Below are positions 25,290 to 58,944 of a DNA stretch of 64,000 bases, piece by piece. Numbering within the stretch: the stretch's first letter is position 1; each line of letters starts with the position of its first letter. Source of the stretch: Mytilus californianus (lineage: Eukaryota); NCBI RefSeq assembly GCF_021869535.1, contig NW_026262690.1, positions 110,608,001 through 110,672,000 of the forward strand. Direction: 5' to 3'. The position numbers and the translations under genes are program-made. The notes under the pieces are model-generated. The model made no database searches. It was not told the origin of the DNA and was given only the letters and a program-made list of their open reading frames with translations.

Positions 25290-25386
25290 GATAGACAGTG
25301 TTGTTTCCAAAAGGTCACGTTGGGTCAAGTTGTCAGACTGACCACAGGTATATACTGGTCAGACATAGCCTAAACAGAAGGTAAGT
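25290..25386 (+). other. Candidate non-coding first exon / strong orphan 5' splice site
   Basis: GAAG|GTAAGT full consensus donor followed by T-rich intron-like DNA; start coordinate approximate. Confidence 0.3.
25312..25327 (+). promoter_or_regulatory. DR4 nuclear-receptor element AGGTCA-cgtt-GGGTCA
   Basis: Exact motif in non-repetitive-looking DNA, about 55 bp upstream of a consensus donor GAAG|GTAAGT at 25380/25381. Confidence 0.5.
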
Positions 25387-26585
25387 CAGTTTTATCTTTG
25401 ATTTCTCATTTTAGAATTTTCTTACTTATCACTTCTTAAAATATTTAGATGCCGGAGATTGGACATTCAAAATAAAGAGACGTATAAAAAATATGTAAAA
25501 CATATTAAGATTTGAAAATACAGCCACGGTTTATTACGTAAACATGTTTAGTGGCGATATGTGATCTTAAAAACGTCCAAGTTAATAAGTATCATGTAAC
25601 ATGAAAATCTACAAAAGAGAAATCGACTTAACAATAATCAAACTTAACTTCCCTGTTGTGAAAAATATAGGTATGTAGTTTAGACTGGTAAGAGAGTTTG
25701 CTTGCAGAATTTATTTTCATTGGAAGAATTAAACTATTACATATAATGGTCTTATCTATCATGAAATATTTATTTCAAACTTTAACATTCAGTCATGAAT
25801 ACGGGTAAGGCCAAAACATATATACTTGTTTCTTGGCCCCTGGTAGAAAAATATGCTAGTTAGATAGGTAAAACTATTTTATTCGGAAAAATATTTTCAT
25901 CCTTATGTAAACGTTCTGGACATTACCTGCCATGAACCAAAAAACCATACTTCGTTTAAACCCGCTACATTTTTATGCACCTGTCCTAAGCCAGGAGCCT
26001 GTTGTTCAGTGGTTGTCGTTCGTTGGAGTGGTTCATAAATGTTTCTCGTTTCTCGTTTTTTACATAGATTAGACCGTTGGTTTTCCTGTTTGAATTATTT
26101 TACACTAGTCATTTTGGGGCCCTTTATATCTTGATGTTCGGTGTGAGCCAATGGTCCGTGTTGAAGGCCGTACTTTGACCTATAATAGTTCACTTTTTAC
26201 ACATTGTGACTTGGATGGAGAGTTGTCTCATTGGCACCCATACCACTTCTTCTTATTTATATTAACTATATAAAGTGTGTTATGGAGGGGGGAGGCTAGG
26301 CAGGAAAAATTAGGGAGGCAGGAAACTGATATATATACTTCTTGCCTCAGAGAATTTACTATCTACATGTACCGATGGTATATAAATTTGATAGTACCTT
26401 ATAGGGCTGGACCACCCATTACCATTCCGTTACTGTGTGATGTCGTAGAACTGGTTCTGACTTAATTAATTTAATAGAAGTAACGCAAAAGCTTACGAAA
26501 ATGCTTTTACATATTCATATTACATGTTAAAAATGTTACGATTAAAAATAACCGTAACACTCGTATATACGAAATATTTTTTTAA

Positions 26586-26790
26586 GGTCAAGGTACATTT
26601 GATGTGCTGTGTCGCAGATTTTGGTAAAATTTTGCATACATCTTTGGCTCGTTGAACTATAACTGAAAATCAAAAAATATAATCTCCTTTACATTCTGAG
26701 AAATACTATTGAAATTAACTCTTTGAAAATATGTGAACATTTGTATAGAAAGCTCATAAAATCGGCGAATAACGTTCTTGTACCTTGACC
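26586..26790. mobile_element. TTAA-flanked (Kolobok-type) MITE
   Basis: TTAA-GGTCAAGGTAC ... GTACCTTGACC-TTAA. Confidence 0.8.
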
Positions 26791-27084
26791 TTAAGCGAAA
26801 CAAAATGTCAATGGTACTTCTAATACATACATAATGATTCATTTTGACCCTCTTTAAGAACATCATATGTCATTGTTTCTACGTAATTTTTTTTTTTTTA
26901 AATTCATTACTCATTTTCACACTAGATGTGTAACTGAATTTAGTCCTTTTTTGGTACGGAAGCAAATATATAATATCGTTTTTTCAACATTTTTTTAAGG
27001 TCAGTATTAATTGTTTTCGCGCTTAATTCTTACATTAAATGTCTTATTTTCACAAATAATGCGTCCCGTTTGTCCTTATTGTTC

Positions 27085-27395
27085 TAAAAGTAGTCACAAA
27101 GTACCGATCTGAGAGTCCTCGAAAAGACCCAAAGTACCGATCTAAGAGTACTCGCAGAGCCACAAAGTACCGATCTAAGAGTACTCGCAGAGCCACAAAG
27201 TACCGATCTAAGAGTCTTCGAAAAGACTCAAAGTACCGATCTGAGAGTACTCGAAGAGACTCAAAGTACCGATCTGAGAGTACTCGAAAAGACCCAAAGT
27301 ACCGATCTGAGAGTACTCGAAGACTCAAAGTACCAATCTGAGAGTACTCGCAGAGACACACAGTACCGATCTGAGAGTACTCGCAGTTACTGAAA
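27085..27395 (+). repeat. ~30-bp minisatellite aaagtaccgatctgagagtactcg...
   Basis: About 10 copies abutting a family A segment. Confidence 0.9.
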
Positions 27396-28113
27396 GCTAG
27401 TTCAAAGCCAATAACAACCACTAAAAATCATGTTTCCAAAACAAATTTCGCCGGTATTGTATTGCACAAAAGACAAAACCACAACTAAGTACTGCCATAT
27501 CAATGAATAATTGTAGTTACTGAGAGAAAGCAATCTGTTGATCCATATAAAAAAATCACGGCTTTTTATACTATAATACCGCACGATGTTCTTTCAAGTG
27601 GACTTTATACATCTATTCCATGCAATGCCAAAAATAAATTTGTACACAGAGTTTCAAAATAAAGGAAGACTTGTTTGAAGAGGTTGAAAATTCAATCGAC
27701 ATTAACTACCCAAATTTTAACATCGGTGAAAGACTGAGAATTGTGACAGCTTTTTCAACTCAAATATAGAAATGTACACTTTGAAATACCACATAGCCCT
27801 TATGGTTGTTATTAGAATATCAAATAATAGTAAAAATATGATAGCTGGCTTAACTTCTGATGCATTTCATTACTTAGTAATATAATCTTACAGTTGCGTA
27901 CAGCATGCTGTATAGCTTTGTATACAAAAGGCAAAAAACAATGATTTGCAATGTGAGCCTCCCCTTATAAAACTGGCTCTTTTGAATCAAACATAATTTC
28001 CGTAAGAAGAACATTCTGAAAAGTTACACGTCCATTGTATTTATCATAAATTTCACCCAATGTTTTGCTGCAGGATACCCACTTAAACATCATCTTGAAA
28101 ACATCAAAATGCG

Positions 28114-28248
28114 CAGGCGCGGATCCAGCCATTTTGAAAAGGGGGGGAGGGGAGGTGGGGGTCTTACCACCGGAACATAATGGAACGTTCACATGATTAA
28201 AATATAACAATAACAAAAATAATAATACCCCCACTTGGATCCGCCAAT
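28114..28248. mobile_element. Degenerate MITE of the GGCGGATCC family
   Basis: caggcgcggatccagccattttg ... ttggatccgccaatg. Confidence 0.65.
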
Positions 28249-28324
28249 GAATACGAGAGGTAATATATAATGGATAGAGCTATGTGTGATAAGATAGTCC
28301 TGTGTTTGACCTAAAGACTTATCA

Positions 28325-28560
28325 TTTTTAACCGGATTTTCGAAGTAAAAATCGGTTATTGATTTGGGGATGTACGATGGGCGGGCGGGCGGGCAGGCGG
28401 GAGGCTGCCAAACAGTGTCCGTTCATTTACATGAAAACGCTTTGAAGAAATGTTTTCAAATTTAGATATGTTGTTTCCTGTGATTAAATGAAGGTCAAGT
28501 TCAATTTTCATGATTTTAGCTTTTCTCGTTGTTCAGTTATAGCCCTTTCCCAAGAATTCA
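28325..28560 (+). mobile_element. HINE-type 5' fragment with (GGCG)n microsatellite
   Basis: tttttaaccggatttt...aaaatcggtta hairpin then gggcgggcgggcgggc and a core-like segment. Confidence 0.45.
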
Positions 28561-29338
28561 ATTTTTGAAAGATTTTTGACATTGTATTAATGATAAATGA
28601 CTTTTTGGATTTTTTTTCTTTTCTTTGGTAAAGTGTGGTAGATTTGTTTGTTATTCTGTATAAACTGATTTTCAGAATGCTATATACATGTATATAATTT
28701 TTTTTATGAAGTGAACTCCTTTACTTAGATAATAATCTATTTTTATTAAAGAATATATTTCATTACATTTACATTGTGTAGATAAAGTTGCAGATCTATA
28801 TTAGTTTGTGACAAATGAAAGAAAAAATATTTGGAACTATTAATTATATTTGATTATAATTTGAAAATAGATATACATTGCGTTACATCATATCTAATTT
28901 TAGAGAACTATTTTTAGTGAAATCATATCTAATGTTAGAGTACTATGTTAAACCATATTTCTGTTCAAAGGGAAATAACCCAAACTTATTCCATGAACCA
29001 GTAATGATAACATCAACATTTCTTTATATCTATTTTTTTAAGTCATGTGTGTTATGAAGGTAGATGTCACAGTTGTTATGTGGTATTTTTGTTGTGAGTG
29101 TTAATGTTTAATTTTTACATGATCCTGTTTGGGGTTCAGATTTGCAAATATCATTTTTATTATTAATCAAATAATAATCTATAGATATTCAATTACAATC
29201 CAAATTCAGAGCTGTTTTAATCTTAAACAAGTCCATACTTGCTCAACTGTTCAGGGTTCGACCTCTGTAGGAAAATCCGGTTTGCTGTCACTCGACAGCC
29301 TCTTGTTTACTAATCGATCGATTTTCCCCCCATGTTGT

Positions 29339-29543
29339 GGGTCTCATTGGGGTCTAAGCGTGACCCGGGATTGCCGATTTTTTGTAAGCGTGACACGTGA
29401 AAGTCATATTATTGTGCCGTGAAAACGGGAAATGAAGTCTAGCGGGACACGGGAAATTACAAAAAAATAAGAATTGCTTGGATACGGGAATCTGACAAAA
29501 CAGTAAGCGGGATCCGGGATCAGAACCCCCCAATGAGACCCCC
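29339..29543. mobile_element. MITE with GGGTCTCATTGGGG/CCCCAATGAGACCC TIRs and 8-10-bp target duplication
   Basis: (cc)catgttgt directly repeated at 29329-29338 and 29542-29551. Confidence 0.85.
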
Positions 29544-30384
29544 CATGTTGTTCCTTGTCAGTTTAAAATGTGTGGGAAAAGGGAGACAATTCTAATTACA
29601 TAAAACGCATTTGGAAATCATCATCAATTACTAGTATTAATTACACGGAATGTAAAAACAGGGTCTGTGTGGTTGTTTACGTCCCCATCTTAAAGAAGGA
29701 AAGTAAATTCAAGACCCCCACCCCAAAAAAAAAATAAATCTTTCAATACTTTTATTCTTTACAACAAACAGTACATTTTCTATTTGAAATATTATTTTTT
29801 TGATAAAATAGTGCACAAGTATTGGAAATAAAGCTTCAAGTGGGGAAGTTGTTTGTGACTACAGGGAACTGTTAATTGAGATCTGAATGACATTCAGTAC
29901 ACTTTCATTAAATTTCAGCACATTGTTCCTATCCATTATCATAGAAGTTATTCAATTAGCTGCAGATAATATTACTTTTCTGAAAGAACATGTTGAAATT
30001 TAAGATTTTTTCTGAACAATTGAGCCGAGCGGAACGAGGCGAAAAACATAACATGATGTCTTTCCTGCCAAAAAAGTTATATTTTCTTTATTGTAAGGGA
30101 AAGCTTCGATCACAGTTTGGTGTGGGTCGCCTGACTACATATCTCCAGGTCACAAAGGAAAATTAGTCACGTTAAGACATATTAAAAATGCCACACTTGA
30201 CTCCTAGATATCATCTGGAACCATTGAAATATATGCTCAATCATGAGTTTTACGATTAATCATGTAAGTAAACAACTTTTAATATTATCAGTGTGTTTAT
30301 TATAAGGAAAGGGGTATATTATTAAGAAAACATTCGAGAAAAAACCTGCAAACATTGAAAGACATCAAACCATTATTCCGGCCT

Positions 30385-30840
30385 AGTATTATATGAATAT
30401 TTTATTTGCAAATGCATACAGAACATGCTATGGCAATACATAATATATACACAATGTGACAAAAGACTGATAACAGAGAACAATACAATAATAACATAAC
30501 TAACCAATAATATCAGATCTAGCTTTCCATGCATTCTTTAAATAGTTACAGAGCTTAATTGTAAGCGATCTAGAATTAGCTTTCAACAAACAAGATAGTT
30601 TAAAGATATTAGGCCATGAACAATAATAGCGTGGCAGAAAAAAAATTCTAATTGCCCTATATGCTGGACATACCAATACAAAATGGAATTCATTCTCAAC
30701 ACATTGCATTTTACAATATACACATAAACGCATTTCTCTTGGTATATCAGAGAAGCGTTTATGTGTATATTGTAAAATACACACATACACATAAACGCAT
30801 TTCTCTTGGTATATCAGAGAAGCGACCAACTTCAACATTT
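30385..30840 (-). mobile_element. LINE ORF2 C-terminal fragment with a local ~48-bp duplication
   Basis: DIPREMRLCVYCKMQCVENEFHFVLVCPAY motif; duplicated segment at 30720-30826. Confidence 0.8.
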
Positions 30841-31689
30841 AGTTTCAAAGTACCACTTCGTAGTTTTGTAGGAATGTGAACATTATTAATAAAGCTTAAA
30901 TAATTTTCAAGACAAAAATCAAACTTTATACTTCTATATACACTTAATTATCATTATTGTCATTCTTCATATCCAACAAACAAACAGAAGATGGTCATGA
31001 CTCACATGTACAAAACATCTAACATTGAAATGAAGTTTGAATAAAAAAAATCATGACACATTAGTTATAGATATGACGTCTAGACGAAAAAATAAATGGG
31101 TAAATTTTAAATTATCAACAGTTATTACTGAATCAAGTGTTAGACACTTCTGTTGAATAATCAGATACTGATTTAGAGAATTCACCAAATAAACTATAAT
31201 TTTTGCATGTTTGAAAAACAGAATGGCTAAAATATTGTAATTTTTTTTTCGTTGCCCCCTCTAAAGTATTGAAAAATTAGATACCCCCCTTTCCATTCCC
31301 AAAATGTGTCAACCCCCTCCTTTTTTCAGGTTACAAATGACCAGTCCCTTATTGTTCAAATTAAAATTATGCATTCTGTTGATGAGGTAAATATGTGGTT
31401 TTGTTGACTTTTGAAAAACTGATGTTCACTGAGCCCAACAGTAAGTTTTGTTTTATCCAAAATGAAATTCATATAGAAAAACCAACTAGAATAATACCGA
31501 TATAGTTTATTGCAGGACATAATATTTATTAACTTAGAGGCCCAGTAAGGGCGATATATGCAAATGCATATTAGATTTTGAAACATAGGACACTTTGAAG
31601 CCTGCACAAACTTATGCATTATATAAAAGAGAATAGGTTTTAGCGTATTATAACAAAAAAATGGGAACACACGTTTTAATTCAAGGAGA

Positions 31690-32300
31690 CAGATATATAA
31701 AGTCGATTTTTAGTCTAAAATATGCCTTTAAAGCCTCGTTACATATAGTTCAGTCTAACACGAATCCCTTAATATGTATAATTAGAAACACATTCAATCG
31801 AGTTATTCTGTAGCAGAAAATAGCCTGATTCTTCTACCAGCCTTATTAAATATAACATCTTTGATTTTTTAATATTAACCTTAAGACTCTTGTCAGCATA
31901 GTATTTTTCGAACTGTATAAGTCAACTTTGAAAGCACTTTACTGATGTTGATATGATCACAAAGTCATCTGCATACATCAAACAATTTATTTTCTCTGAG
32001 TGAAAGGAAACTGCATCCAAATAAGATTCAATATAATATGAAAAATCATTCATAAATATGTAAAATAAAGAAGAGCTGAAATTGTTCCCTTGTCTTACAC
32101 CTTACTTAATGCTAAATGAATCAGTGAGAGAACCTCCAACACTTACACATGAAAATTGCTTTACTATGTTTATACACATCTGATATAATAATAAAAAAAA
32201 AACCACACAGTACACTGTACCGACGTTCACATTGATAACTAGTAATTTTAGTTTTAGACTTACATAAATTACACTATCAAAAGCTTTATTGAAGTCTACA
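31690..32300 (-). pseudogene. Degraded non-LTR reverse transcriptase fragment
   Basis: Minus strand gives CFVDFNKAFDSV, GVRQG and NCLMYADDFVII motifs with stops. Confidence 0.85.
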
Positions 32301-33226
32301 AAACAGGTATAGATGTAAAGATAAGAAGATGTGGTACGATTGCCATTGAGACAAATTTCCACCAGAGACCAGTAAATGTAGACAGCTCTCTCACACCACG
32401 CAAAACAACATGGCTCTATATAAGGGCATACACCACAAGAACGCATACATGTCAAAGACTAATCCAGATGTCAATATCGTCAATATCGACAATTTCGACA
32501 CGACATCGGATTGATATCGAACAACTTATACACTTATGACATATATATAACCAGGTGTCGATTTCGATGACGACACAATGACAAAACCTGATGTCGATTT
32601 CATAAAAAAAAAAAAAATAGGACATATCAAGCTGATCAAATTAGGACCGAATATAGAGATTGATATAGGGTGAGATGATGGCTGAATTGTAATCAATTTA
32701 TTTTGTTCCCATTGTATTTATACAAGACAATCTAGTGGTTTCCTCTCCAAATTACTGTACCCTTTAGAAAACAAATTCCAATTGGTTGCATAACGTTGAC
32801 ATGGTAATTTAGCCTAGGTGATAAATACCGGTAAGTGAAATATGGTTACTTACAAAGATCATGAAAATACAGATATAGTACAAACATTACTATGTAAAAT
32901 TTAAATCCATGGGATGTGAACTGCTTCATATTTCAAACAGAGAAAGCATGGTGTATTTATTGGTTGAAATAAGATTTTAACTTGATTTGAATAGTTTTGA
33001 GTACTCTTAGATCGGTACCATGTGATTTTGTGTATTTGTTGTTATGCTTTGTGTCGATAAGTATAGTCATTTTAAACGGATTTTTTACATTGTGTATTTA
33101 ATATACTATTTATATATTGATGAAACACCACCGTCCTAGAATTAAGGGAAGGGTTACCCTCATAAACATGTTTAATAAAGCCACATTCTCAATGTTAATG
33201 ACCCTACACCGGAGTTCGATGATTAA

Positions 33227-33609
33227 GGATGTTCGCTCCTCTTGTTTTTGAATTTTTGCCAGATATTCGGAATCCTCTTGTTTTATCCATGTAGTGCCAT
33301 TAAGAATTTTGCCCGCTAACCTCTACTTTTCTTTTCATAATTTTATTACAGTTAAAAAGGCCATATTTGAAAATCCTATAAAATCCTTGTTATTTTTCGT
33401 AGTTTTTGAAAGAAAAATGGTGCCAATGTTAAATGTATGAAAAGTCTAGAGAGAATCATTTACCGCCAATTTTTCAATGGCTTATATCGAAAACAAGCAC
33501 ACGGACCCTTCATTTTTTTCTGCTTTTTTAGTTCCTTTATTTATTTACTTATCAATTTATAACAGTCTTTTAAAAAGGTTGTTATTTTGAAACAGAGTAG
33601 CGAACATCC
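33227..33609. mobile_element. TTAA-flanked (Kolobok-type) MITE nested in a dispersed repeat
   Basis: TTAA-GGATGTTCGCT ... AGCGAACATCC-TTAA; purine-purine termini. Confidence 0.85.
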
Positions 33610-34019
33610 TTAAATGGTTGTCGTCGGTTTCTGTCTGTCATTATTGATTTTCGTTTATCATGCACTTAGACATCAATTAGAATGTTTGTTTTCCCGTTTG
33701 AAATATTTGACATTTTGTCATGCAGATATTAGTGTTGCCCTTTGTTGAAGACTGTACGTTGACCTATAGTTGTTGACATCCTCATTCTTGGTTTATTGTC
33801 TCATTGGAAGTCGTACAACATCTCTTTATCTTAACATTTAATTATAATACGTTATTTTGATTGGCTAACAGCAATCTCGCGTCATTCTGAAATTAACCTT
33901 CATTTTCAAATTGAAATGTAATATTCATGACGATACGAGCTTCCACAATAAAGTGCACAGGTAAATAAAAAAAAAACTTGATAGAAATCGTGTTTTCGTG
34001 ATCCTTGCAAAAAAAATGT

Positions 34020-34170
34020 AATTATAAGTATTGAACGCTTCTTTTAGTAATTTTATAGGGTGTAAATTAATCGATGAACGTGCGTACATTTTTAGAATCA
34101 TACAAAATGTACTTCGGTCAACGCTTTTACACCCCAATAAATTTACAAAAAGAAGCATTCAATTCTTAAA
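34020..34170. repeat. ~45-bp inverted repeat pair, probable end of a non-autonomous DNA element
   Basis: ataagtattgaacgcttcttttagtaattttatagggtgtaaa versus ttttacaccccaataaatttacaaaaagaagcattcaattcttaa. Confidence 0.65.
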
Positions 34171-35889
34171 TAAAGGTACGTAAACTAAACTAAATGAAAT
34201 GAATAGAGAAAGAATTTATGAAGGATTTTTTTATATGGAATCGATATCGACATCTTTAACATATAGGAGAAACTAAATTGCCTATGTAGATAACTATAGC
34301 AGATAGACATTTGGAACATAATTTGTCGATATCGACTCATGTCGTCGACATGGAAATACCGATAAACTCATTGCAAGAACAAACCAGTTGAGGAAGCTTT
34401 TAAAAGTCTCATTGGAAATGCAATATTTTTTTGTTATCTTTATTTGAATAATTATAGATATCAAACATGTCTAATTAAATACATGCTACTTTGTGTATAT
34501 TATGCATGAAATATTTGCGACTTGACTACTAGCAATTGAGCAAATCAATCTATTTAATTTCGTGAGAAAACTTTTCTACGATCCCACCATAGTCTCCTTA
34601 TCTTTACATTGTTAATTTGCTAAATGTAATGAAGAACATATAAACTAAACTATACAAAATGAATAGAAATCGTCCAGAAGATTTTTTTAAATGTCGATAT
34701 GGAATCGATAGTCGATATCGAGAGCTTAAACATATAAACCAGGAGAAACTAAATTGTCTTTATGGCCAACTGTATCAGATAAACACATGGGACATAAACA
34801 TAAGGCGATGAGAAGACTGGCGATAAAGAATCGATATCGACACTTGTTTTAAATGTATACAAAGTATACAAAATTAGAGTAAATCATTGTGAGGAAATTC
34901 AATTGTCGATATCAACAACATAAATAAACGATTCATTTAGGCGGAGAAAACATTGTCGATGTCGAATCGATATCGTCGATGTCGAATCTATATCAGCGAT
35001 ATCGACAACTTAAACAGTTTAACCAAAAGAAACTGGAAGAAAATATCATCAGAGTTCTCGTTCACACTAATTTAATTATCTAGATAATTAAATAGTGAAT
35101 GTTTTCTTTGCCATTAACATGATTAAGGAAGATTGCCAGTTTCTTTAGCTGGCAATGAAATATTTCGTCCACAGTAGAAAGAAGATTCCGGAAATTATTT
35201 GCCCAAGTGTCCGAATCAATGTGGGAAGAGACATTTTTTTGTTTTTACTATCCTGAATAATATTTATTAATCAACTGTCAGCATTTCAAGTTTCTGTAGC
35301 ATGAAATTGATGAATTACTTTATTTAATCTTTCTACATTTGTTGTAGATTCTTTTTATTTAATATTCAGCTTTAATAACTGACGAATATGAAATCGATTG
35401 AAAATTAGTACTTTTAAGCAAGGACAGAACATTTAACAGTTTGATATAGGTGGGCGACCTAAAGATTTTTTTTATATAAATAGGGGCGATACTGTTGTAT
35501 GTAAGGAAAAACTGGTTGTGACCAGGTGTTGTTCATCAAAGATTAATTGCAATTGATTCTATCATCATTTAATATCATGCAGCTTATTGTTTCGTTCATT
35601 AAAAAGTCATTTACACTGAGGAGTCCCCGAGAGTGGACACCAAACCTGCATAAGTATTTATACTTTTTTTTACTATCGGTATATAATGTTTTAACATTTT
35701 TTAATTTTTGCATTGTATAATTATATGTATTATCAGAAGTCCATTGTCCATATGCCTTCAATCCCTCCGGGTATAAATGTGTATTAATTAATAATAAAAA
35801 AATATTCAAATGCCTTCAACCCCTAGGGGTATAAATGTGCATTTCTTTTGTTTAAATATAAAGTTAATCAGTCTAGTGTATCTTGATAT

Positions 35890-36096
35890 GAGGGTCTGGA
35901 TGGGGTTTACAGAATAGAGAATAATGGGCGAAAAATATAAAGAATACAGAAAAATGGACCAAAAAATAAAGAATTGGGAATAATGGGGTACTAAAATATA
36001 GAGAATAGAGTATAATGGGAACCACATATAAAGAATAGAGAAAAATAGCCTAAAAATTAAAGAATACAGAAATGAAGGACCCCCATCCAGAACCTC
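35890..36096. mobile_element. MITE with GAGGGTCTGGATGGGG TIRs; further copies at 1580-1780 and 57805-57961
   Basis: 16-bp TIR pair; the internal ttctctattctttata repeats align with the two other copies in opposite orientation. Confidence 0.85.
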
Positions 36097-38260: not shown

Positions 38261-39004
38261 AAATATAAAATATAAATTACACAATTTACACAATTTACAT
38301 AAACACACATTTTAAAAAATGTATTATCTGGTCCTCCTCGTGGCTGAGTATACTAAACAGTGATCCAGATGCAGCCAGTAGTCACAAAGGGCAAGCGCTC
38401 AAACGTCATTATGTTTATTATCAAAACTGTGCAAGATTATTTGGATTTGAAAAAAAAATTATACTGATGCAGCCTCTATAACAACTTGTTACGATACTCT
38501 GCTAATTAATCAATCATAAAGATAAATAAAGAAAATGGTATGATATACATATAACAATTAAGCGCCCCACCCAAGTAGCCCTCTCCCCAGACATTTATTT
38601 GACCACATCATTAGTGTTCTTGATTGATATCACGTAAATCATGTATATCAATATATTGTATATTTGTACAAAGGTTGAGTGACAGGCAATACTAGAACAT
38701 TGATCGGGTCATACGTACATAACTTACACAGGTATAACGGCCTTACACGACCTCGGTCAGGAGGTCGCATGTATATTGGCCTTGTCACGGTGCATTAGAA
38801 ACGATAAAATAATTCACCAACAGTGCAATTTTTCTGTAGTAAAACTGCCCGGATGGATGTGTGGAGAGCGACATCATTCTTTTGTTTTCGTTTTTACATA
38901 TATTTTTTAACACTTTGGTGTTATTTCATTTACCTATAACTTTTATGAAAATATGGATATTTAATAGTTCTTAGTTACTTGCTGAAAATTCAATGTTATT
39001 TTAA

Positions 39005-39257
39005 GGGAGCTGCCATTTGATTTTTATGGCGGGCTAGGATGAAAAATTTTGTCCTGCCTTTTTTTTTAGTTGTAGTCTCTGTCCTGCCTTTTTATTTTTC
39101 ACTCTATTCGGTCCTGCCTTTTTTTTTTGAGTTTATCCTGACTTTTTTTTACATAAATTGTCATCCTGCCTTTTTTTTTACTCAAAACTCCTGTCCTGCC
39201 TATTTTTTTCAAATTTCATCCTAGACCCCCCCCCCTAAAAATCAAATGGTAGCTCCC
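39005..39257. mobile_element. PIF/Harbinger-type MITE
   Basis: TIR GGGAGCTGCCATTTGATTTTTA / TAAAAATCAAATGGTAGCTCCC with TAA on both sides; internal tcctgcctttttt subrepeats. Confidence 0.85.
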
Positions 39258-39739
39258 TAAATGTAAAAAAGTCTTAACAAAAATATCGAACTGGGAGGTA
39301 AATTCTAAAATGGGAGAAGTCCATAAAACCTGACAAAATCAAACGTTGAACTATATCAACCAATGAAACGAATGGAAAACAACTGTCATATTCCTGACTT
39401 GTTACAGGCATTTTCCGAAGAAAATGGTGGGTTGAACTTGTAAAACAACTTCTCATATTAGCTGGAATAAAACAACAGAACAGTTTAGTAATTACTGACC
39501 CGCTTTTAAAAATCATATCTCCTTAGTTATACATACTAGTATATATATATCTAGTCAAATGCGTTTTGTTAAAATATACTTTTTCACTCATTTGGTCTTT
39601 TGGAAAATGTTGTTTGTGCTGTATTTGGACCCCTCTACCAAGAAATTTGTTTTGCATGCACACGTATAAAAATTGCGGTTTTTATTCAACACAATCATAG
39701 GTTTGAACGTTGTTTTCAATTTAGACTTGTATATATATG

Positions 39740-40020
39740 TAGGTATACACTGTTATATATGGATAAACTCATCATAGATACCAGGATTAAAATTTTATAC
39801 TCCAGACGCGCGTTTCGTCTACAAAAGACTCATCAGTCAAAAAATAAAAAAAGCCAAATAAAGGTCGAAGTTGAAGAGCATTGAGGTACAAAAAAATTCC
39901 AAAAGGTTTTGCAAAATACATATAAGGTAGTCTATTCATGGGGTAGAAAATCCTTAGTATTTCGAAAAATTCAAAGTTTTGTAAACAGTTAATTTATAGT
40001 TATTACCTTATCAAATGAAC
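39740..40020 (-). mobile_element. Retrozyme-like non-autonomous repeat body carrying the hammerhead
   Basis: Non-coding segment around the hammerhead core; boundaries approximate and based on recognition of the repeat type. Confidence 0.45.
39800..39840 (-). ncRNA. Minimal type I hammerhead ribozyme core (retrozyme/Penelope-like relic), stem I damaged
   Basis: Minus strand reads CUGAUGA-GUC(UUUUGUA)GAC-GAAA-C(GCGC)G-UC: intact core, 3-bp stem II, palindromic stem III, NUH site GUC; stem I pairs poorly. Confidence 0.75.
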
Positions 40021-42834
40021 CCGAGAAGAAAATATAAGGTTCTGCTTAGTAGAAACTGTATACGTAGATTGTAATAAAAGGCCCAGTAAAAAATACAGCT
40101 TAAGATTTTGGTTGAAATTTGGCGATTTACCGGGCGTGTTCACGTTAATAGTTGCTATTTCAAAAGGTAGGGCCTTCATTTCTTACGCGCACCTGGACCT
40201 TTTTCAAAACGAAGTACTTATTCAAATCTTTACTCACGGAAACTAAAAGTATAACAGCCTCGTCGTGTGTGTACTTAAACAATTAACAATATTAAGTTGT
40301 ATTTCTAAATATATGTTACCAAATTATAAGCGCACATAACTGAATTTTTTATTAATAATGGAGTACTAATATAATGGGCGCCCCCTAACATGTTTAACCC
40401 CGCCACATTATGCCTGTCCCAAGTCAGGAGCCTGTAATTCAGTGGTAGTCGTTTGTTTCTGTGTATCATTTTTTTTTTCGTTCATTATTTTGTACATAAA
40501 TTAGGCCGTTAGTTTTCTCGTTTGAATTGTTTTACATTTGTCATTTCGGGCCTTTTATAGCTGACTATGCGGTATGGGTTTTGCTCATTGTTGAAGGCCG
40601 TACGGTGACCTATAGTTGTTAATTTCTGTGTCGTTTGGTCTCTTGTGAAGAGTTGTCTCGTTAGCAGTTATATCACATCTTCTTATTTTTATACTGATAA
40701 AAAAAGAATACGAAAGATAAATCAAATCAAACATCAAACTTCCGGAATCAAAACTGTGGGTTTCTTTGGGGTTCTTTCTTTGAAAAATAAAAAAAACCCC
40801 AATTTGATATAAAAATAAGAGGACGTGGCATGATTTCCAATGAGACAACTCTCCACAAGAGACCAAATGACGTAGTAGAAGTTAGCAACTTTAGGCCACC
40901 GTGCGGTTATTTGTAAAAATAAAATAAAATTGTCTTCAAGAGCAATGCATGATGTTTTGTTATTGTCGATATATATATATATAATTTAATGATGATAATT
41001 AAAATATATTAGTTTCGACTCTTTAATATTTGAATTTCAAAAATGTAATTAACTTTCAATTTTCACCTTGGTAATGAAATTTGTCATACTATTCTGACAT
41101 GATATTGATCAAACCATCCTTCATAATCTTCATTTTAATATACATGTATGTCATAAATGATTCAGATAAGTCATAAATGGTAAGAAACAAAAACGGAACA
41201 TCATGAAAATGTCAAACATTTCAAAATATTTTTTTAGATGTTGTTTATTTAAGTCTCGTCTGCTTAAATCAATGTCTGTCTGTGTCGTTTTTTAAATTAG
41301 TCTGTATCTGTTTTTTGTTGTTGTTGTCTTTTCGGAAATGCTGTATATACATCAAATAGACAGCAACTACACAATTAAAATCCGTATGTACCATGTATAC
41401 AACAAACAATTATAGCCAGTATGTGCAATGTGTACAGCAACTAAACAAGTGAAACCAGTATGCACAATGTATACAACAATCAAACAATTAAAACCAGTGT
41501 GTTACAATTTAAACACCCAAAAAATCAAAACCAGCTTGTACTATTAAAAAAACAACCAAAAAATTAAAACCGGTCAAACAATTTCCATTCTCAATTTTAT
41601 AATGTATACAACAACCAAACACTTAAAACTAGTATATGCATCAGTTAGACAGTAACCGAACAATTATAACAGGGGTTCTTAAATTCAAAATTAGGTTTAT
41701 GCGTTTTTCAGCTGACTTTTGTGCAATGTATCATTTGATTAATAGCTACTTACAATCAATTTTGGTTGGTCCAATGCACTAGTTCCATGATTTGCGATTT
41801 TTTTAATTTTTTTGGCATTTATGGAATAACCATTATTTTTTTTGTAAAAATTATTTCCGTACTCCATGTATACCTTACAACAAAATAATTTTTATTTACC
41901 TGTGTACGTTATTTTATTTAGCGGCATTTTGTCCAAGGTTATAGTTGTCTTTTTGATATTGTTTTACATCTAACCCCCTTGTTTTATTAATTTTGTATTT
42001 ACATTGTGTCATAGATCAAATTTATTCGTTCAGTGTATGTTCACTTGTTTTTGTTACTATGTCTTTTGATTGAGTTAAGCCATTTCAATTGATATTTTAT
42101 AGTGTGTCTTTCTTTGTTGTGATGTTACACTATTGTTTCAGGTAGGGTGAAGGTTGCCGCCTATTAAAACGTTTAAACCCGCTGCATTTGTTTGCACCTG
42201 TCCTAAGTCAGGATCATGATGTTCAGTGGTTGTCGTTTGTTGATGTGGTTCATACGTGTTTCTCGTTTCTCGTTTTTTATATAGATTAGACCGTTGGTTT
42301 TCCTGTTTGAATGGTTTTACACTAGTAGTTTTTGGGGCCCTTTATAGCTTGCTGTTCTGTGTGAGCCAAGGCTCCGTGTTGAAGGCCGAACTTTGACCTA
42401 AAATGGTTTATTTTTACAAATTGTGACTTGGATGGAGAGTTGTCTCATTGGCACTCTTACCACATCTTCTTATATCTATTTGTTTAGTTGGTACAATTTA
42501 TTACCATTTTTTGAATATTTTGGGAATTTTTTGTATGATATGTCGGAATTATGATCCGTCTCTCTAGTGCTAGTGTATATCCTTAATTACCGTCAGGCTA
42601 CGATAAAAAAAAAAGGATATGATATTTGTGATATCTATGAAACTGGATTTTTCTAGTAAATCGCTTACTGATTGAACAATTCTTATACTTCAGTCTAAAA
42701 TATGCATTTGTGGTACACAATTATATTGCTACTACCTCCTTTATGGAGAATAAGCATGCTGTTTGTGTTCCAATTTAATTATTTTTTCCTCAATTAAACC
42801 GTACTGGTCAATCAATATAATGTACGCGATGTAA

Positions 42835-42850
42835 GGGTCATCTCAGGTCA
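42835..42850 (+). promoter_or_regulatory. DR4 element GGGTCA-tctc-AGGTCA
   Basis: Exact motif; upstream of the CCAATGATTGG double CCAAT box (about 42952) and the DR5 at 43018. Confidence 0.5.
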
Positions 42851-42939
42851 GGCTACTATACATCTTCATTAGATTTAACATTGTTGGTGTGTTTTTTGTG
42901 AGGTTTTAAGTTTTTTCCCATGGTCGTGCATGCAGATGT

Positions 42940-43117
42940 CGTCCAGACTAGATCCAATGATTGGTCAAGAAGTGACGGACATTACGTCTCGTTGTATAAG
43001 TTGTAAGTGGACGGTGATGACCTGCCGATGACCTGTCTGTTCTGTTTATAGGATTATTAAGTTCAATATTCTATTTAATCTTATCCAAAGATTTAAAGGT
43101 TTTCTGACACGGTAAGA
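42940..43117 (+). other. Candidate promoter and non-coding first exon of gene 2
   Basis: CCAAT box, TGACG motif, DR4 and DR5 elements, donor ACG|GTAAGA; gene 2 exon at 52546 has an acceptor and so needs an upstream exon. Confidence 0.4.
43018..43034 (-). promoter_or_regulatory. DR5 (RARE-type) element AGGTCA-tcggc-AGGTCA
   Basis: Plus strand reads TGACCT-gccga-TGACCT; donor ACG|GTAAGA at 43111/43112 lies about 80 bp downstream. Confidence 0.55.
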
Positions 43118-43215
43118 ATAAGTACTAACACTAATTTTTAAATTTAAGTAATTGCAGTATATAATATTTTTTCATTATTTATTATCGTTTTTTTATTTAT
43201 TTATGTATTTATCTT

Positions 43216-43345
43216 NNNNNNNNNNNNNNNNNNNNNNNNNNNNNNNNNNNNNNNNNNNNNNNNNNNNNNNNNNNNNNNNNNNNNNNNNNNNNNNNNNNNN
43301 NNNNNNNNNNNNNNNNNNNNNNNNNNNNNNNNNNNNNNNNNNNNN
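43216..43345. other. Assembly gap (130 N)
   Basis: Run of N. Confidence 0.99.
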
Positions 43346-44088
43346 TTTAAAATTTTGATCAGTTTACTGTTGTTGTTTTTTTTGTTGAGTGTTCGTGTTT
43401 GGATAATCAATTTTTTATTTTATTTTAGCGTAAATCAGTGACCAAACTTTATTTTTGTGTTTTAAATTAAAAGAGTTTTATTAGAATTTCATATATATTT
43501 TCTTTAGTTTTTAATGAATCTATGCCAGCCAGTGCATTACTGAAAAAGACGAGAAATGAATTATTGTGCAAAATGGAAATATCTAAAATTTAGTTTCTTT
43601 AAAATGAATGCAAAATATGGCATGCATGCAGTGGCGGATCAATCATTTTCAAAAATAAGGGAGGTGACAGTAAAAAAAATAGTTCTTAAAACACAAATGT
43701 TCGGCCATAAGGGGGATCGAACAACCTCATGTCTCACAGTATCCGTCTCCATGCATACACACAATTTTTACATAGTGCTGCCTTACATGTCACTCTTTTG
43801 CCATTTCTGTATTCAGGAAAGTTGCAGCCTTATTTTTTCTTGATAAAAAAGTAGGCACGAGTTAGATCCCCCCAGAATAGTTAGGTTATCCTGTCATCTA
43901 TGATAAGCATTGGGTCAACACGTTCCTCATATTGAAAGTTTTACTTTGAAAGAAGAATGTCTCTACTGATGTCATCATAGATAACTTTATCAGCTAAATT
44001 GTACTGTTCATTTAAGGTCCGTTTCGGTCATATAGTTCCATACTTATTCAGGTATTCATACATCCTTGGTTTTCAAATGTTTGGATTT

Positions 44089-44132
44089 GAGCGTTCCTGG
44101 TGCAGGTTAATCCAGAAAAGCGCTTCGGAAGC
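44089..44132 (+). ncRNA. Degenerate hammerhead relic of a second family
   Basis: GCGUUC-CUGGUGC-AGGUUAAUCCA-GAAA-AGCGCU-UC-GGAAGC: stem I pairs 5/6 and stem III is palindromic, but the core has two substitutions; a partial copy sits at 13923-13947. Confidence 0.5.
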
Positions 44133-45269
44133 ACGAAATATATAACGTGGCATTTTCATTAAAAAGAATTAAAGGAGATGTGGATATAGTTTAAGTAGAC
44201 GAATTAATAGAATAATCAAGAGACATCTAGAGGGCATCATGCAGTCTCTTCAACGACAGACAGATGTATATACAACATTATATCAAGCTCCAAATCGTCC
44301 CTAGTCTAAAAGTTGTGATTAAATTCAGTGAACAGAAATTTTCAAAGATGTGCCATCAACTCAAATTCTAAAAAAAAACATATATAAATAATATAAAACA
44401 ACCACGGACGAGGTTCCTGACTTAAAACAGACACATAAATATGTGGTGGGGTTAAACTAGTTTGTTTATATTTTTTGTTGATATTTTGTTTTAGATCACA
44501 AATCTCCCCCTTTTTAATGTCGATTAGTGAGATACACAAATAACAAACAATTCATATATATGTATATATTTTTATCTCGATCAGTAGATTAGCAAAGAGA
44601 ACAAGTAAACCAGAACCATAAAAGCACAAATTAAAAATAACGATATAAAAGATAACAAAAAACAGAAAAATAATAATAAAGCATACTGATGCTTGCAGTT
44701 AATGAAAGCAAGTTTAAAGTACTTACCTAAACTGCTGATAAGAAATCATGTCGTTCTGCATCTAATATTGGTTGCTGTATAAGATTTCAAAACTCATGTA
44801 AAAGTAGCCTTTTTGAAAGTGCGTTGCATTGGTAAATTTGAACTTTTGTAGAATAATTAAATAATTGATATGGAAATCTACACAATGAGATTGGAAGTTT
44901 TGTTATCAAAATAAACAAGTTATATTTTAGAAAGGGGAATAACTCTTATAACAAATTTTGCATTTTTAGACTTAAACTGGTTCTCAGCTGACTACTACAC
45001 TTTGCGTAGCATAAATACAAGCGGGTTCCAGTTTATTTTAGACTGAATCATAATCATAATTTGGGAAATAAGCCAAACAAATGGCCCGGATATATGAAGT
45101 TTTAGCACCTCGTCACAGTTTATCTATGTCTGACCCAAGCAATATAATACACACAAAAATCGACGGATAGTACATCTTTTCCGAACAGTCACTTCAAACT
45201 TATGTGATACAAAAGCATTCTTAGTAGAGTATTATTCCTAAAGGGGGCATTTCTCTGAAATTTTTAAAG

Positions 45270-45605
45270 GGAAGGGGACCATTTAATAGTATTTATATCT
45301 TATTCTTAAAGGGGACCATTTTACAGGAGTATTAATATCTTATTATTAAAGGAGGACTTATTCTTTAAGAGGGACTACTAGTATTTTATAGTGGTATTAA
45401 TACCTTATTCTTCAAGAGGGACTACTAGTATTTTATAGTGGTATTAATACCTTATTCTTCAAGAGGGACTACTAGTATTTTATAGTGGTATTAATACCTT
45501 ATTCTTCAAGAGGGACTATTTATAGTGGTATTAATACTTTATGTTTCAAGGGGGACTATTTTAAAGGAGTATTAATACCTTATTCTTCAAGGGGGACTAT
45601 TTATA
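45270..45605 (+). repeat. ~48-bp minisatellite (ggtattaataccttattcttcaagagggactactagtattttatagt)
   Basis: Three near-identical and several degenerate copies. Confidence 0.85.
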
Positions 45606-47090
45606 TTGTTGGAAGTGTTTACATCAGCACAATATCAGACTATATCATTTCAGTTTCGATGATTGATTGATTGATTTTCAGTTTAACGTAATTCTTTCAA
45701 GTATTTGGGATAGAAGAAAAAGGGAAATGTTAAACAAAATAGCTGCAATTGTCAGAGCATGGACAGCCAAAAAAAAACTCAGTCGAACTGAGTGACTCTT
45801 TAATGCTGCACCCGCCGAACTAAGTTTGACTCTTTGATCCTGAAAAAATGCTTTGTGTTAATATCTTTATAGGTTAAACTTTTTAACTGTTTGGTGTTTG
45901 TTTTACGTCACAACCATTTAAACACCAGTCTGAGACTGAGACCGACTGGTACTGACAAAAAAGTCATCACTTAACTTAAGTGTCCGTTTTGGTTTTTTTG
46001 TTGTTGTTTTTTTGGTAAGTTAGTTTATATTTTGTTCGGTTTTTGTGTTTGTTTCTTTATTTTTTTTTGCTTTATTTTGTTTCCAATTAGATTGTTCCTT
46101 TCCTTAAAATCTTCATTTTCTTTATATCATCTGGTTGTTCTGTTTTATACTGTTCATCCTGCAATTGAACAGAAAGCAATATAATGCTAAGATTCATGTA
46201 CCTAATTGTGAGTCAAATGATTGAGATTAAAACAGGGGGAACAATTTTAACACCACCTCATAAGTCTCAAGTCCGAACTTATCATCGGTTGTCTAATGTC
46301 GTATCCTAATGTTTTTGGGGTTTTTATTAAATATTAAAACTCGGGAGTGGACGATTTAGAGCTTGATAAATTGACATATTATTGTGTCAGCATCTTCAAA
46401 ACTTATACGGGTTATTTGTAACTAGGTTATTGATCATTAATGACTAGGCGGAAAAACAACTCTCATATCAAGGACACTTTTCCAAGGTTCCGGTGACTGT
46501 GACATGAACTCCAGAATTTCAATATTCTTATCCATTTTATAAATTAAACATATACAATCTCCACTGTGAGCAAATGCAGTAGCATTTATTTTTATATTCG
46601 AGTCATGTTGACATACATGAATAATAAGTGGTCATCTAATGTATTTTATTTTCTTCTTTTTTTGGGTGATTTTTTTTAATATTTTGAAAGGCGTTTACGG
46701 GAGGAAAGCATTCTGTTCTTTGGTTTGAATATGCTGAGGATATAGGCTTATTCACATCAACTCCCAACCCCCTTTTTATTTGTATTGTTCTGACAATGAA
46801 TATGTACTTATATACAATAGTATTGATTAAATTAAAATCTGTGAATAAGAATAATTTGACCGTTATTGTTAAATGATAACATTGTCTGGTTTAAAATATG
46901 TCCTTCTTGTAAATTTCTTCAAAATTAAGCGTGTTTGTATGATTTATTGATTATTGGTTTCAGTATGACCCTACCGCGCATGTCAGGGTCATCCGAGGAT
47001 AAGTTCATCTGAGGTAAATACCGAGTTCATCTAGCGGACAAATAGCTATTTTTACATTGATATAAGCATTGGAGGTACATTGAACAGTAA

Positions 47091-47107
47091 TGACCTGACG
47101 TTGACCC
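47091..47107 (-). promoter_or_regulatory. DR5 (RARE-type) element GGGTCA-acgtc-AGGTCA
   Basis: Plus strand reads TGACCT-gacgt-TGACCC; further half-sites near 46966, 46986 and 47279; donor AAG|GTAAGC at 47353/47354. Confidence 0.55.
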
Positions 47108-47229
47108 AAAGATTTCAATGCTTTTTTACCGTTCCAAAGCCTTCCAACTGGCAAAATAATGCATTAATCCTTTTACCTTTGTACAAAGCATTCAATAAAA
47201 TCTTATTTTGTTAAGAAAATGGGATCGTA

Positions 47230-47359
47230 TGTAACTTTACGTAAAGGTCGAGAGAGTGGTCAGACCGAACCAGACTCGAGGGTCAATACTCTGACATTGG
47301 GTTAGGTAAATATCTAACACAGCCCACCGGCATTTAATATGTAGACACTAAAGGTAAGC
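47230..47359 (+). other. Candidate second non-coding first exon of gene 2
   Basis: Locally GC-richer, half-site rich, donor AAG|GTAAGC followed by T-rich intron-like sequence. Confidence 0.35.
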
Positions 47360-58853: not shown

Positions 58854-58944
58854 GTATGTAGAGTGGTTATGTAACTTTTTGTGCATGTCTGTCTGTGTAG
58901 CCTGCAGAGATTTGTAATGGACTATAGCTAATGCAGGTCACCTG

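What the first reader, a model, noticed from the sequence alone, without database searches (positions are those of the whole stretch)
25312..47359. DR4/DR5 nuclear-receptor elements at three candidate alternative promoters upstream of gene 2
Seen: four exact RGGTCA direct repeats, DR4 at 25312 (AGGTCAcgttGGGTCA), DR4 at 42835 (GGGTCAtctcAGGTCA), DR5 at 43018 (minus, AGGTCAtcggcAGGTCA) and DR5 at 47091 (minus, GGGTCAacgtcAGGTCA), plus an imperfect DR5 at 24885-24901. Each cluster lies within about 55-280 bp of a strong + strand donor with no coding exon (25380, 43111, 47353), and the gene 2 exon at 52546 has an acceptor that needs an upstream partner. A rough estimate assuming about one-third GC gives roughly 0.04 expected DR1-5 hits per window; this is understated because local transposons also carry AGGTCA. 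Established: DR5 and DR4 are the canonical RAR/RXR and TR/RXR (LXR/RXR) spacings, and vertebrate RAR-beta and TR-beta are induced through such sites. Inference: a multi-promoter, nuclear-receptor-responsive locus in a mollusc, possibly autoregulatory.
Basis: partly seen in the sequence, partly recalled or inferred. Interest (0 to 1): 0.78.

Follow-up and report, generated by a model that had tools for sequence, protein, structure and literature searches.

The report
Receptor-site clusters upstream of mussel ER gene
The four direct-repeat motifs are real and sit in unusual clusters of nuclear-receptor half-sites beside the mussel estrogen-receptor gene; one cluster is almost unchanged between mussel species, but no RNA data yet show that any cluster is a promoter.

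Summary
Observation confirmed. The two DR4 and two DR5 RGGTCA repeats, the three GGTAAG donors and the acceptor at 52546 are all where stated. They far exceed chance (0.02 and 0.00 per spacing in shuffles).

"Gene 2" is the mussel estrogen receptor (ER, NR3A). Exon 52585-53487 encodes its long N-terminal A/B domain.

- P3, with its DR5 and donor, is 97-99% identical to related Mytilus loci. That is more than the coding exon (89-97%); the background is 45-85%. It is single-copy.
- P4 is 98% conserved.
- P1 and P2 lie beyond the fetched flanks and could not be tested for conservation.

Promoter use is unproven: the one true RNA run had no reads on this gene.

Assigning DR4 to TR or LXR and DR5 to RAR is unsafe, because oyster TR binds DR0-DR5.

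The best autoregulation candidate is a different site: a perfect consensus ERE in an intron (62720-62734). It keeps its position in Mytilus, Pinctada, Tegillarca and, with one mismatch, Pecten.

Verdict: partly supported; a new member of a known kind.

The parts
24885..24901 (-). Imperfect DR5 (GGTTCA-5-CGGTCA) at the edge of cluster P1
   Evidence: Read; GGTCA cores listed
25119..25129 (.). Palindrome TGACCAGGTCA in P1. With its TAA flank it is identical over 14 nt to the copy in P4
   Evidence: only two exact copies in the window (25119 and 58450)
25312..25327 (+). Exact DR4 AGGTCAcgttGGGTCA, centre of cluster P1 (GGTCA cores span 25119-25361)
   Evidence: No copy elsewhere in the window or in the fetched loci. 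Conservation not testable
25380..25385 (+). Consensus donor AAG|GTAAGT, 53 bp downstream of the P1 DR4
   Evidence: No RNA evidence
42835..42850 (+). Exact DR4 GGGTCAtctcAGGTCA in cluster P2 (cores span 42806-43033)
43018..43034 (-). Exact DR5 AGGTCAtcggcAGGTCA in P2. Matches the P3 DR5 and its flanks at 17 of 20 positions
43111..43116 (+). Donor ACG|GTAAGA, 77 bp downstream of the P2 DR5
   Evidence: No RNA evidence
43216..43345 (.). Assembly gap (N) in the presumed intron after the P2 donor. Continuity not verifiable
46896..47445 (+). P3: conserved non-coding block, 96.9% identical to L003 and 97-99% in its core. Candidate promoter plus non-coding first exon of the long ER isoform
   Evidence: Single-copy DNA depth. 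No ORF of 50 aa or more. No RNA family or stable hairpin
46966..46991 (.). Everted pair TGACCC-14-GGGTCA inside P3, invariant in L003 and L004
47091..47107 (-). Exact DR5 GGGTCAacgtcAGGTCA inside P3, invariant in L003, L004 and L010
47353..47358 (+). Donor AAG|GTAAGC inside P3. The surrounding 22-mer is invariant in L003, L004 and L010
   Evidence: The X1 contig runs through it unspliced, but X1 may be DNA
52543..52584 (+). Acceptor (TTTCAG; exon starts at 52546) and 39 nt of 5'UTR before the start codon
   Evidence: conserved in L001, L003, L004 and L010. An in-frame stop lies upstream of the ATG
52585..53487 (+). First coding exon of the long ER isoform (A/B domain, begins MPPPKKPK). The donor GGTAAG is at 53486
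58446..58595 (+). P4: fourth GGTCA-core cluster (6 cores in 100 bp), 98% conserved, just upstream of the exon that carries the short-isoform ATG
58675..58854 (+). Exon shared by the long isoform and the short isoform. The short isoform starts MAERLN (ATG at 58720), as in the M. galloprovincialis 489-aa 'estrogen receptor alpha'
62720..62734 (.). Perfect consensus ERE (IR3) AGGTCAgttTGACCT in a conserved intronic block (62646-62945), about 1.0 kb upstream of exon 63721
   Evidence: Positional counterparts in Pinctada, Tegillarca and Pecten

Best explanation
The window holds the 5' half of the mussel estrogen receptor (NR3A) gene.

Shown:
These are the only such clusters in the 64 kb.
- The two clusters that can be compared between species are under strong purifying selection.
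- GGTCA-containing 6-mers are the most enriched words in the locus's conserved non-coding DNA.

Inferred:
- The clusters are cis-regulatory modules bound by nuclear receptors. The direct repeats would be bound by RXR partners or other receptors that bind direct repeats; which ones cannot be told from spacing in a bivalve.
- P3 is most likely a promoter plus a short untranslated first exon. Its conserved donor (47353) would splice to the conserved acceptor at 52546 to give the long isoform.
- P4 is most likely the proximal promoter of the short isoform.
- P1 and P2 are probably further modules of the same class, either alternative promoters or distal enhancers. This would parallel the multi-promoter 5' region of vertebrate ESR1.
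- Self-regulation by ER would run mainly through the perfect, deeply conserved intronic ERE at 62720, not through the DR4 and DR5 sites.
For: - Motifs and their excess over chance.
- Gene identity: a 722-aa relative, 95% identical over the exon, has zf-C4 and ligand-binding domains. Its best solved relative is the oyster ER ligand-binding domain 4n1y (E = 1.5e-84). Sources name the relatives estrogen receptor.
- Acceptor conserved across mytilids.
- P3 is 97-99% identical to L003, against 89-97% for the coding exon and 45-85% for the background. The DR5, the other half-sites and the donor are invariant in L003, L004 and L010.
- P3 has single-copy DNA depth. The X15 contig shows no differences over 47050-47407 but 8 in the next 204 bp.
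- Unbiased 6-mer test on 1.2 kb of conserved non-coding blocks: the five most enriched words all contain the GGTCA/TGACC core. RGGTCA is seen 10 times against 1.05 expected, p = 2e-7.
- Exactly four windows hold 5 or more cores per 300 bp, against 0.02-0.14 expected. No simulation reached four.
- The motif TGACCAGGTCATAA is shared only by P1 and the conserved P4.
- GGTAAG is rare on the + strand (17 copies), yet follows each of P1, P2 and P3 within 53-246 bp.
- A long-isoform mRNA with a 5'UTR of at least 144 nt exists in another bivalve.
- Literature: nuclear-receptor genes commonly have several untranslated first exons (PMC3692471). ESR1 has 8 (PMC5472281). Mollusc ER binds the consensus ERE (PMC3778743) and is constitutively active (PMC3886901).
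Against: - No transcript evidence. The only true RNA run (X21, about 6% of it read) had no reads on exon 52546-53049 or on P3, so no junction or start site was seen.
- The X1 contig 47279-47451 crosses the P3 donor unspliced, though X1 may be DNA.
- Conservation of P1 and P2 could not be tested. They lie 9.5 and 27 kb upstream, across an assembly gap whose join is unverified, and P1 could serve another gene.
- L003, L004, L005 and L010 come from closely related species, so they amount to about one independent comparison.
- CpG content does not mark any of the clusters.
- A single GGTAAG within a 550-bp block has about a 15% chance of being incidental.
- No binding data exist for any site.
Confidence: 0.55

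Rival explanations
1. The clusters are enhancers or silencers of the ER gene, not promoters. The GGTAAG donors are incidental, and the true untranslated first exon lies elsewhere, possibly outside the window.
For: - No reads or start sites at the donors.
- P3 conservation runs about 90 bp past the donor and about 450 bp upstream of it, as in an enhancer block.
- The X1 contig is unspliced across 47353.
- CpG content is unremarkable.
Against: - Three of three upstream clusters have a rare consensus donor on the gene's strand within 53-246 bp.
- The P3 donor and its flanks are invariant.
- P3 is the only strongly conserved block in the 9 kb upstream of an acceptor that needs a partner.
Confidence: 0.3
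2. Only P3 and P4 are functional. The DR4 and DR5 motifs at P1 and P2 are chance or repeat-borne half-site clusters with no role at this gene.
For: - P1 and P2 are untested for conservation.
- The window is rich in repeats. Copies of a ~310-bp interspersed repeat lie within 360-570 bp of both.
- Some repeats carry AGGTCA.
Against: - The repeat copies do not overlap the motifs.
- The P1 and P2 cores have no second copy in the window or in about 300 kb of related loci.
- Clusters this dense are expected 0.02-0.14 times per window, and both testable ones are conserved.
- P1 shares a 14-mer with P4, and the P2 DR5 matches the P3 DR5 at 17 of 20 positions.
Confidence: 0.2
3. The conserved P3 block is something other than a receptor-responsive element, for example a non-coding RNA gene or a module bound by factors unrelated to nuclear receptors.
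For: Function was inferred only from motif content and conservation.
Against: - No Rfam family or tRNA.
- No window with a folding z-score below -2.
- No ORF of 50 aa or more.
- GGTCA-core words are the top enriched 6-mers across all conserved blocks.
Confidence: 0.07

Closest known systems
Human ESR1 5' region: several promoters and untranslated first exons spread over about 150 kb (PMC5472281); the same layout is general for nuclear-receptor genes (PMC3692471)
   Same: Orthologous gene family (ER). The first coding exon has an acceptor a few tens of nt before the ATG that needs an upstream non-coding exon. Several candidate upstream donor-bearing blocks are spread over 5-27 kb. A second, shorter N-terminal isoform also exists.
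   Different: Use of the mussel upstream exons is not shown by any RNA. The mussel gene also has a long A/B exon (about 300 aa) with no Pfam match and no relatives outside bivalve ER genes in the searches run.
Autoregulated receptor promoters with direct repeats: oyster TR promoter with an atypical DR5 bound by CgTR (PMC4692385); vertebrate RAR-beta2 DR5 and TR-beta (from my own knowledge)
   Same: Direct repeats of AGGTCA-type half-sites beside the start of a nuclear-receptor gene. The bivalve precedent shows such a site can be bound and can repress.
   Different: Here the gene is ER, whose own DNA-binding domain prefers IR3 palindromes. The DR4 and DR5 sites would therefore mediate cross-regulation by other receptors, not self-regulation. 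Oyster TR binds DR0-DR5, so spacing does not name the partner.
Consensus estrogen response element AGGTCAnnnTGACCT, and proposed ER/ERR autoregulation in Mytilus (Nagasawa et al. 2015, Gene 564:153; title seen in reference lists, text not held)
   Same: A perfect IR3 lies inside the ER gene itself. Mollusc ER binds this consensus in vitro (PMC3778743).
   Different: The element is intronic (62720), not in the 5' flank, and keeps its position across four bivalve orders or families. I could not check whether the 2015 paper or Tran et al. 2016 already describe it.

Membership tests
DR4/DR5 hormone response element (RXR-heterodimer type) | Two RGGTCA half-sites in direct orientation, spaced by 4 or 5 nt | tested here: met
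   two exact DR4 and two exact DR5
DR4/DR5 hormone response element (RXR-heterodimer type) | Element retained at the orthologous place in related species | tested here: inconclusive
   The P3 DR5 is invariant in L003, L004 and L010. The P1 and P2 elements lie outside every fetched flank
DR4/DR5 hormone response element (RXR-heterodimer type) | Spacing specifies the partner (DR4 = TR/LXR, DR5 = RAR), and the site is bound and confers a ligand response | not testable with these tools
   No binding or reporter data. Oyster TR binds DR0-DR5 with order DR3>DR2>DR5>DR0>DR4>DR1 (PMC4692385), so the rule may not hold in bivalves
Alternative promoter with untranslated first exon of a nuclear-receptor gene (ESR1-like) | The downstream gene is a nuclear receptor, and its coding exon has an acceptor in the 5'UTR | tested here: met
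   ER ortholog; conserved acceptor 39 nt before the ATG
Alternative promoter with untranslated first exon of a nuclear-receptor gene (ESR1-like) | RNA that starts at the block and is spliced from its donor to the common acceptor | tested here: inconclusive
   RNA run X21 has no reads on the exon or on P3. The other runs are DNA or of unknown kind. No Mytilus mRNA contig of the long isoform turned up in the protein collection
Alternative promoter with untranslated first exon of a nuclear-receptor gene (ESR1-like) | Donor and surrounding block under constraint | tested here: inconclusive
   Met for P3. Not testable for P1 and P2
Autoregulatory estrogen response element | Palindromic IR3 of AGGTCA half-sites within the ER locus, conserved | tested here: met
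   (perfect and invariant in four Mytilus loci); the only IR3 with 1 mismatch or fewer in each of the Pinctada, Tegillarca and Pecten loci, always 0.8-1.6 kb upstream of the exon before the DNA-binding-domain exons
Autoregulatory estrogen response element | Bound by the receptor, and changes transcription of its own gene | not testable with these tools
   Only general evidence that a mollusc ER binds the consensus ERE (PMC3778743)
   P3: DNA depth 53.8 and 21.3, equal to the single-copy baseline of 55.4 and 17.8, while a true repeat at 49650-50050 reaches over 100,000. P1 and P2: no other copy in the window or in ten related loci, but genome-wide copy number was not measured

The most novel reading that the evidence does not exclude
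Bivalve ER genes may carry an ancient self-activating circuit. A perfect ERE is kept at the same intronic position since before mussels, pearl oysters, ark clams and scallops diverged. It would work together with GGTCA-rich modules at each alternative promoter, which take input from RXR-partner receptors. A constitutively active, ligand-independent receptor would then set its own level through positive feedback, gated by other receptors. This would also offer an indirect route for the reported induction of mollusc ER mRNA by hormones and endocrine disruptors.
Probability: 0.3. Interest if true: 0.65.

Novelty: new member of a known kind. Interest (0 to 1): 0.5.

Why it matters
What the ligand-independent mollusc ER regulates, and why its mRNA responds to estrogens and pollutants, are open questions in mollusc endocrinology and ecotoxicology. 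This locus gives concrete sites to test:
- a 550-bp conserved upstream block holding a DR5 and a splice donor;
- three similar half-site clusters;
- a perfect ERE kept at the same intronic position across distant bivalves.

These allow direct tests of ER self-regulation and of cross-talk with RXR, RAR, TR or ERR by EMSA, reporter assays, ATAC-seq or ChIP. The work also shows that vertebrate spacing rules should not be used to name the partner receptor in a bivalve.

Tried and rejected
- **RNA test of the junctions.** The true RNA run had no reads on the gene. X15 and X16 proved to be DNA, and X1 is of unknown kind. The junctions therefore remain untested.
- **Reaching the P1 and P2 orthologs.** Four Mytilus loci were fetched with the maximum 10-kb flanks. 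All gene ranges start at the ATG, so the flanks end at about window 43.3-47.7 kb. An exact look-up of a 33-aa ORF across P2 found nothing. No upstream gene was found that could serve as an anchor: Pfam on ten ORFs gave no match.
- **5'UTR comparison.** The 5'UTR of a distant bivalve's long-isoform mRNA (L006) does not align to the window.
- **Shared origin of the three candidates.** They are not copies of one another or of anything else in the window.
- **CpG content.** Observed/expected CpG does not distinguish the clusters.
- **Non-coding RNA gene at P3.** Rfam, tRNA and hairpin scans gave nothing.
- **Gene identification by quick routes.** Pfam and Atlas searches on the 301-aa exon alone were uninformative. 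Identification needed the exhaustive representative search.
- **Key papers.** Nagasawa 2015 and Tran 2016 are not held.


Full report
**1. Observation**

The DR4s are at 25312 (+) and 42835 (+); the DR5s are at 43018 (-) and 47091 (-). Dinucleotide-preserving shuffles give 0.02 and 0.00 matches.

Half-sites are somewhat over-represented in the window: 66 against 40 expected. Using the real counts I expect about 0.037 hits per DR spacing, or about 0.18 for DR1-5.

The full spacing spectrum is still striking. Every close pair with a spacer of 12 nt or less has a classical receptor arrangement:
- one DR2 (19631);
- two DR4;
- two DR5;
- one IR3, a perfect consensus estrogen response element at 62720-62734.

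The three donors are real. GGTAAG occurs only 17 times on the + strand, six of them in one tandem array. Three copies follow the DR elements by 53, 77 and 246 bp.

The assembly gap 43216-43345 lies in the presumed intron, 105 bp after the second donor, and touches no motif. I could not verify continuity across it and did not try to fill it.

**2. What gene 2 is**

The 301-aa ORF at 52585-53487 has no Pfam match and only unnamed exon-sized relatives in the word search. The exhaustive representative search found a 722-aa protein that is 95% identical over the exon. That protein has:
- a C4 zinc-finger DNA-binding domain and a ligand-binding domain;
- the ER-type P-box CEGCKA;
- the oyster ER ligand-binding domain 4n1y as best solved relative, E = 1.5e-84.

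Sources name the relatives estrogen receptor in Mytilus galloprovincialis, Pinctada, Pecten, Tegillarca, oysters and gastropods.

The window therefore holds the 5' half of the mussel ER (NR3A) gene. Other agents' notes call this genome California mussel; I did not check that.

Exons in the window:
- the long A/B exon, 52585-53487, whose donor GGTAAG is at 53486;
- an exon at 58675-58854;
- an exon from 63721.

A 489-aa M. galloprovincialis 'estrogen receptor alpha' starts at MAERLN inside the 58.7 kb exon; in the window this ATG is at 58720.

A spliced mRNA contig from another bivalve encodes the long isoform with a 5'UTR of at least 144 nt.

**3. The acceptor**

The ATG at 52585 is preceded by an in-frame stop and by TTTCAG ending at 52545. 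In a mytilid with only 68% protein identity, and in three Mytilus loci, similarity holds from the ATG back to exactly this acceptor and then falls away.

**4. Conservation**

I fetched related ER loci with the maximum 10-kb flanks:
- L003 (GCA_905397895.1);
- L004 (GCA_036588685.2);
- L005 (M. galloprovincialis, GCA_900618805.1);
- L010 (M. galloprovincialis, GCA_965363235.1).

In a syntenic alignment of window 43.3-54 kb with L003, identity in 100-bp bins is 45-85% in most non-coding DNA and 89-97% in the coding exon. It is 97-99% across 46946-47345.

This block (46896-47445, 'P3') is the largest conserved non-coding element in the 9 kb upstream of the exon. The following are invariant in L003 and L004, and the DR5 and the donor 22-mer also in L010:
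- the DR5;
- an everted pair at 46966-46991;
- GGGTCA at 47280;
- a TTACGTAA palindrome;
- the donor with its flanks.

P3 is single-copy. DNA depth is 53.8 and 21.3, against a baseline of 55.4 and 17.8, while a true repeat at 49650-50050 exceeds 100,000. The same-species DNA contig of X15 has no difference over 47050-47407 but eight in the next 204 bp.

P3 has no ORF of 50 aa or more, no Rfam or tRNA match and no stable hairpin.

The four Mytilus loci come from closely related species and count as roughly one independent comparison.

**5. The motifs are parts of larger clusters**

An unbiased 6-mer test on the 1.2 kb of conserved non-coding blocks ranks ATGACC, CTGACC, TGACCA, GGGTCA and AGGTCA as the five most enriched words. 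All five contain the GGTCA/TGACC core. RGGTCA occurs 10 times against 1.05 expected, p = 2e-7.

I then scanned the whole window for 5 or more GGTCA cores per 300 bp. This gives exactly four clusters:
- P1, 25119-25361;
- P2, 42806-43033;
- P3, 46857-47106;

Simulations expect 0.02-0.14 such clusters, and none reached four.

The two clusters that can be aligned are 94% (P3) and 99% (P4) identical to L003. P4 lies just upstream of the exon that carries the short-isoform ATG.

The clusters also share sequence. TGACCAGGTCATAA occurs only in P1 and in P4. The P2 and P3 DR5s agree at 17 of 20 positions including flanks.

P1 and P2 have no second copy in the window or in the related loci. The ~310-bp interspersed repeat copies nearby (25953-26263, 42170-42480) do not overlap the motifs.

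By analogy P1 and P2 are probably functional modules of the same class. Their own conservation could not be tested, because every fetched flank ends at about window 43.3 kb or later.

**6. Promoter use is not shown**

The only true RNA run (X21, about 6% of it read) had no reads on the ER exon or on P3. The gene is silent in that sample, so no junction could be seen. X15 and X16 behave as DNA.

X1, labelled RNA only by a guess, has a contig that runs unspliced through donor 47353. This is weak evidence against splicing, and only if X1 is RNA.

No Mytilus mRNA contig for the long isoform turned up in the protein collection. 'Three alternative promoters' therefore remains a hypothesis. It is best supported for P3 (conserved donor, the only strongly conserved upstream block) and untested for P1 and P2. 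The clusters could equally be enhancers.

**7. Which receptors?**

In the Pacific oyster, TR interacts with RXR but binds DR0-DR5 in the order DR3>DR2>DR5>DR0>DR4>DR1. Its own promoter carries an atypical DR5 through which it represses itself (PMC4692385). Spacing therefore does not name the partner in a bivalve.

ER itself binds IR3 palindromes. A gastropod ER binds the vertebrate consensus ERE (PMC3778743), and mollusc ERs are constitutive activators (PMC3886901). The DR4 and DR5 sites would therefore mediate cross-regulation by other receptors, not ER self-regulation.

**8. A better autoregulation candidate**

The perfect ERE at 62720-62734 sits in a conserved intronic block (62646-62945, 95.7%). 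It is invariant in all four Mytilus loci.

In each of three distant bivalve ER loci, the only IR3 with one mismatch or fewer lies at the equivalent place, 0.8-1.6 kb upstream of the exon before the DNA-binding-domain exons:
- Pinctada: GGGTCAgagTGACCC;
- Tegillarca: AGGTCAtctTGACCT;
- Pecten: GGGTCAgacTGACCG (one mismatch).

Chance expectation is about 0.02-0.03 exact IR3 per locus. The flanks do not align, so only the element itself is retained.

This suggests an ancient self-regulatory ERE. Titles of Nagasawa et al. 2015 (ER/ERR 'autoregulatory capabilities' in Mytilus) and Tran et al. 2016 (oyster ER gene induction) show the idea has been raised. The papers are not held, so I cannot say whether this intronic site is already described.

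**9. Comparison and verdict**

The layout resembles vertebrate ESR1, which has multiple promoters and eight untranslated upstream exons (PMC5472281). It also fits the general rule that nuclear-receptor genes carry several 5' untranslated exons (PMC3692471).

This is a nuclear-receptor locus with conserved receptor-type elements and probably several promoters. Promoter use, the partner receptors and the status of P1 and P2 remain open. The autoregulation idea fits the intronic ERE better than the DR4 and DR5 motifs.
- It is a new member of a known kind, of moderate interest.

Noticed in passing
window 62720-62734; L008 17235; L009 17606; L007 20450: A perfect consensus ERE lies in an intron of the ER gene. 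It is invariant in four Mytilus loci. A single IR3 sits at the equivalent place (0.8-1.6 kb upstream of the exon before the DNA-binding-domain exons) in Pinctada, Tegillarca and, with one mismatch, Pecten. Only the element is retained, not its flanks.
   Followed up: yes
window 58446-58595: A fourth GGTCA-core cluster (six cores in 100 bp, 98% conserved) lies directly upstream of the exon with the short-isoform ATG (58720). It shares TGACCAGGTCATAA with the 25.1 kb cluster.
   Followed up: partly
window 49650-50050: Very high-copy repeat. Summed contig depth exceeds 100,000 in two DNA runs, against about 55 and 18 elsewhere. The only RNA reads laid in the 6-kb stretch fall here, all of them running on into unlike sequence.
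   Followed up: no
window 21555-21787, 25953-26263, 40386-40692, 42170-42480; also L003 19440-19598, L004 4328-4598, L005 14627-14786: A ~310-bp interspersed repeat family (72-93% identical among the in-window copies). Copies lie a few hundred bp from both P1 and P2 but do not overlap the motifs.
   Followed up: partly
window 16747-19018; L010 5556-7590; L003 38000-39191: A block of tandem arrays (periods 162, 35 and 135 bp) recurs at different places in the ER loci of other Mytilus species. In M. galloprovincialis it lies between P3 and the coding exon. This points to a mobile or recombining satellite-bearing element.
   Followed up: no
window 26582-26597 and 26779-26794: Perfect 16-nt inverted repeat TTAAGGTCAAGGTACA with 181 nt between the arms. 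Each arm carries a TNAAGGTCA-type extended half-site. It could be a small inverted-repeat transposon.
   Followed up: no
window 30500-32455 (-) and 56573-57148 (-): These ORFs have reverse-transcriptase-like and C-terminal cysteine-rich motifs that look like LINE fragments to the eye. Pfam gave no significant match.
   Followed up: partly
window 8159-10385: A 30-bp minisatellite of about 75 copies that creates long spurious ORFs on both strands.
   Followed up: no
window 63637-63825; P0007 residues about 361-415: The 30-bp tandem array overlaps the exon that begins at 63721. The related 722-aa gene model contains a duplicated DSIDKLSLKDDSLAGGYPG segment there, so copy number probably varies between species or between gene models.
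   Followed up: no
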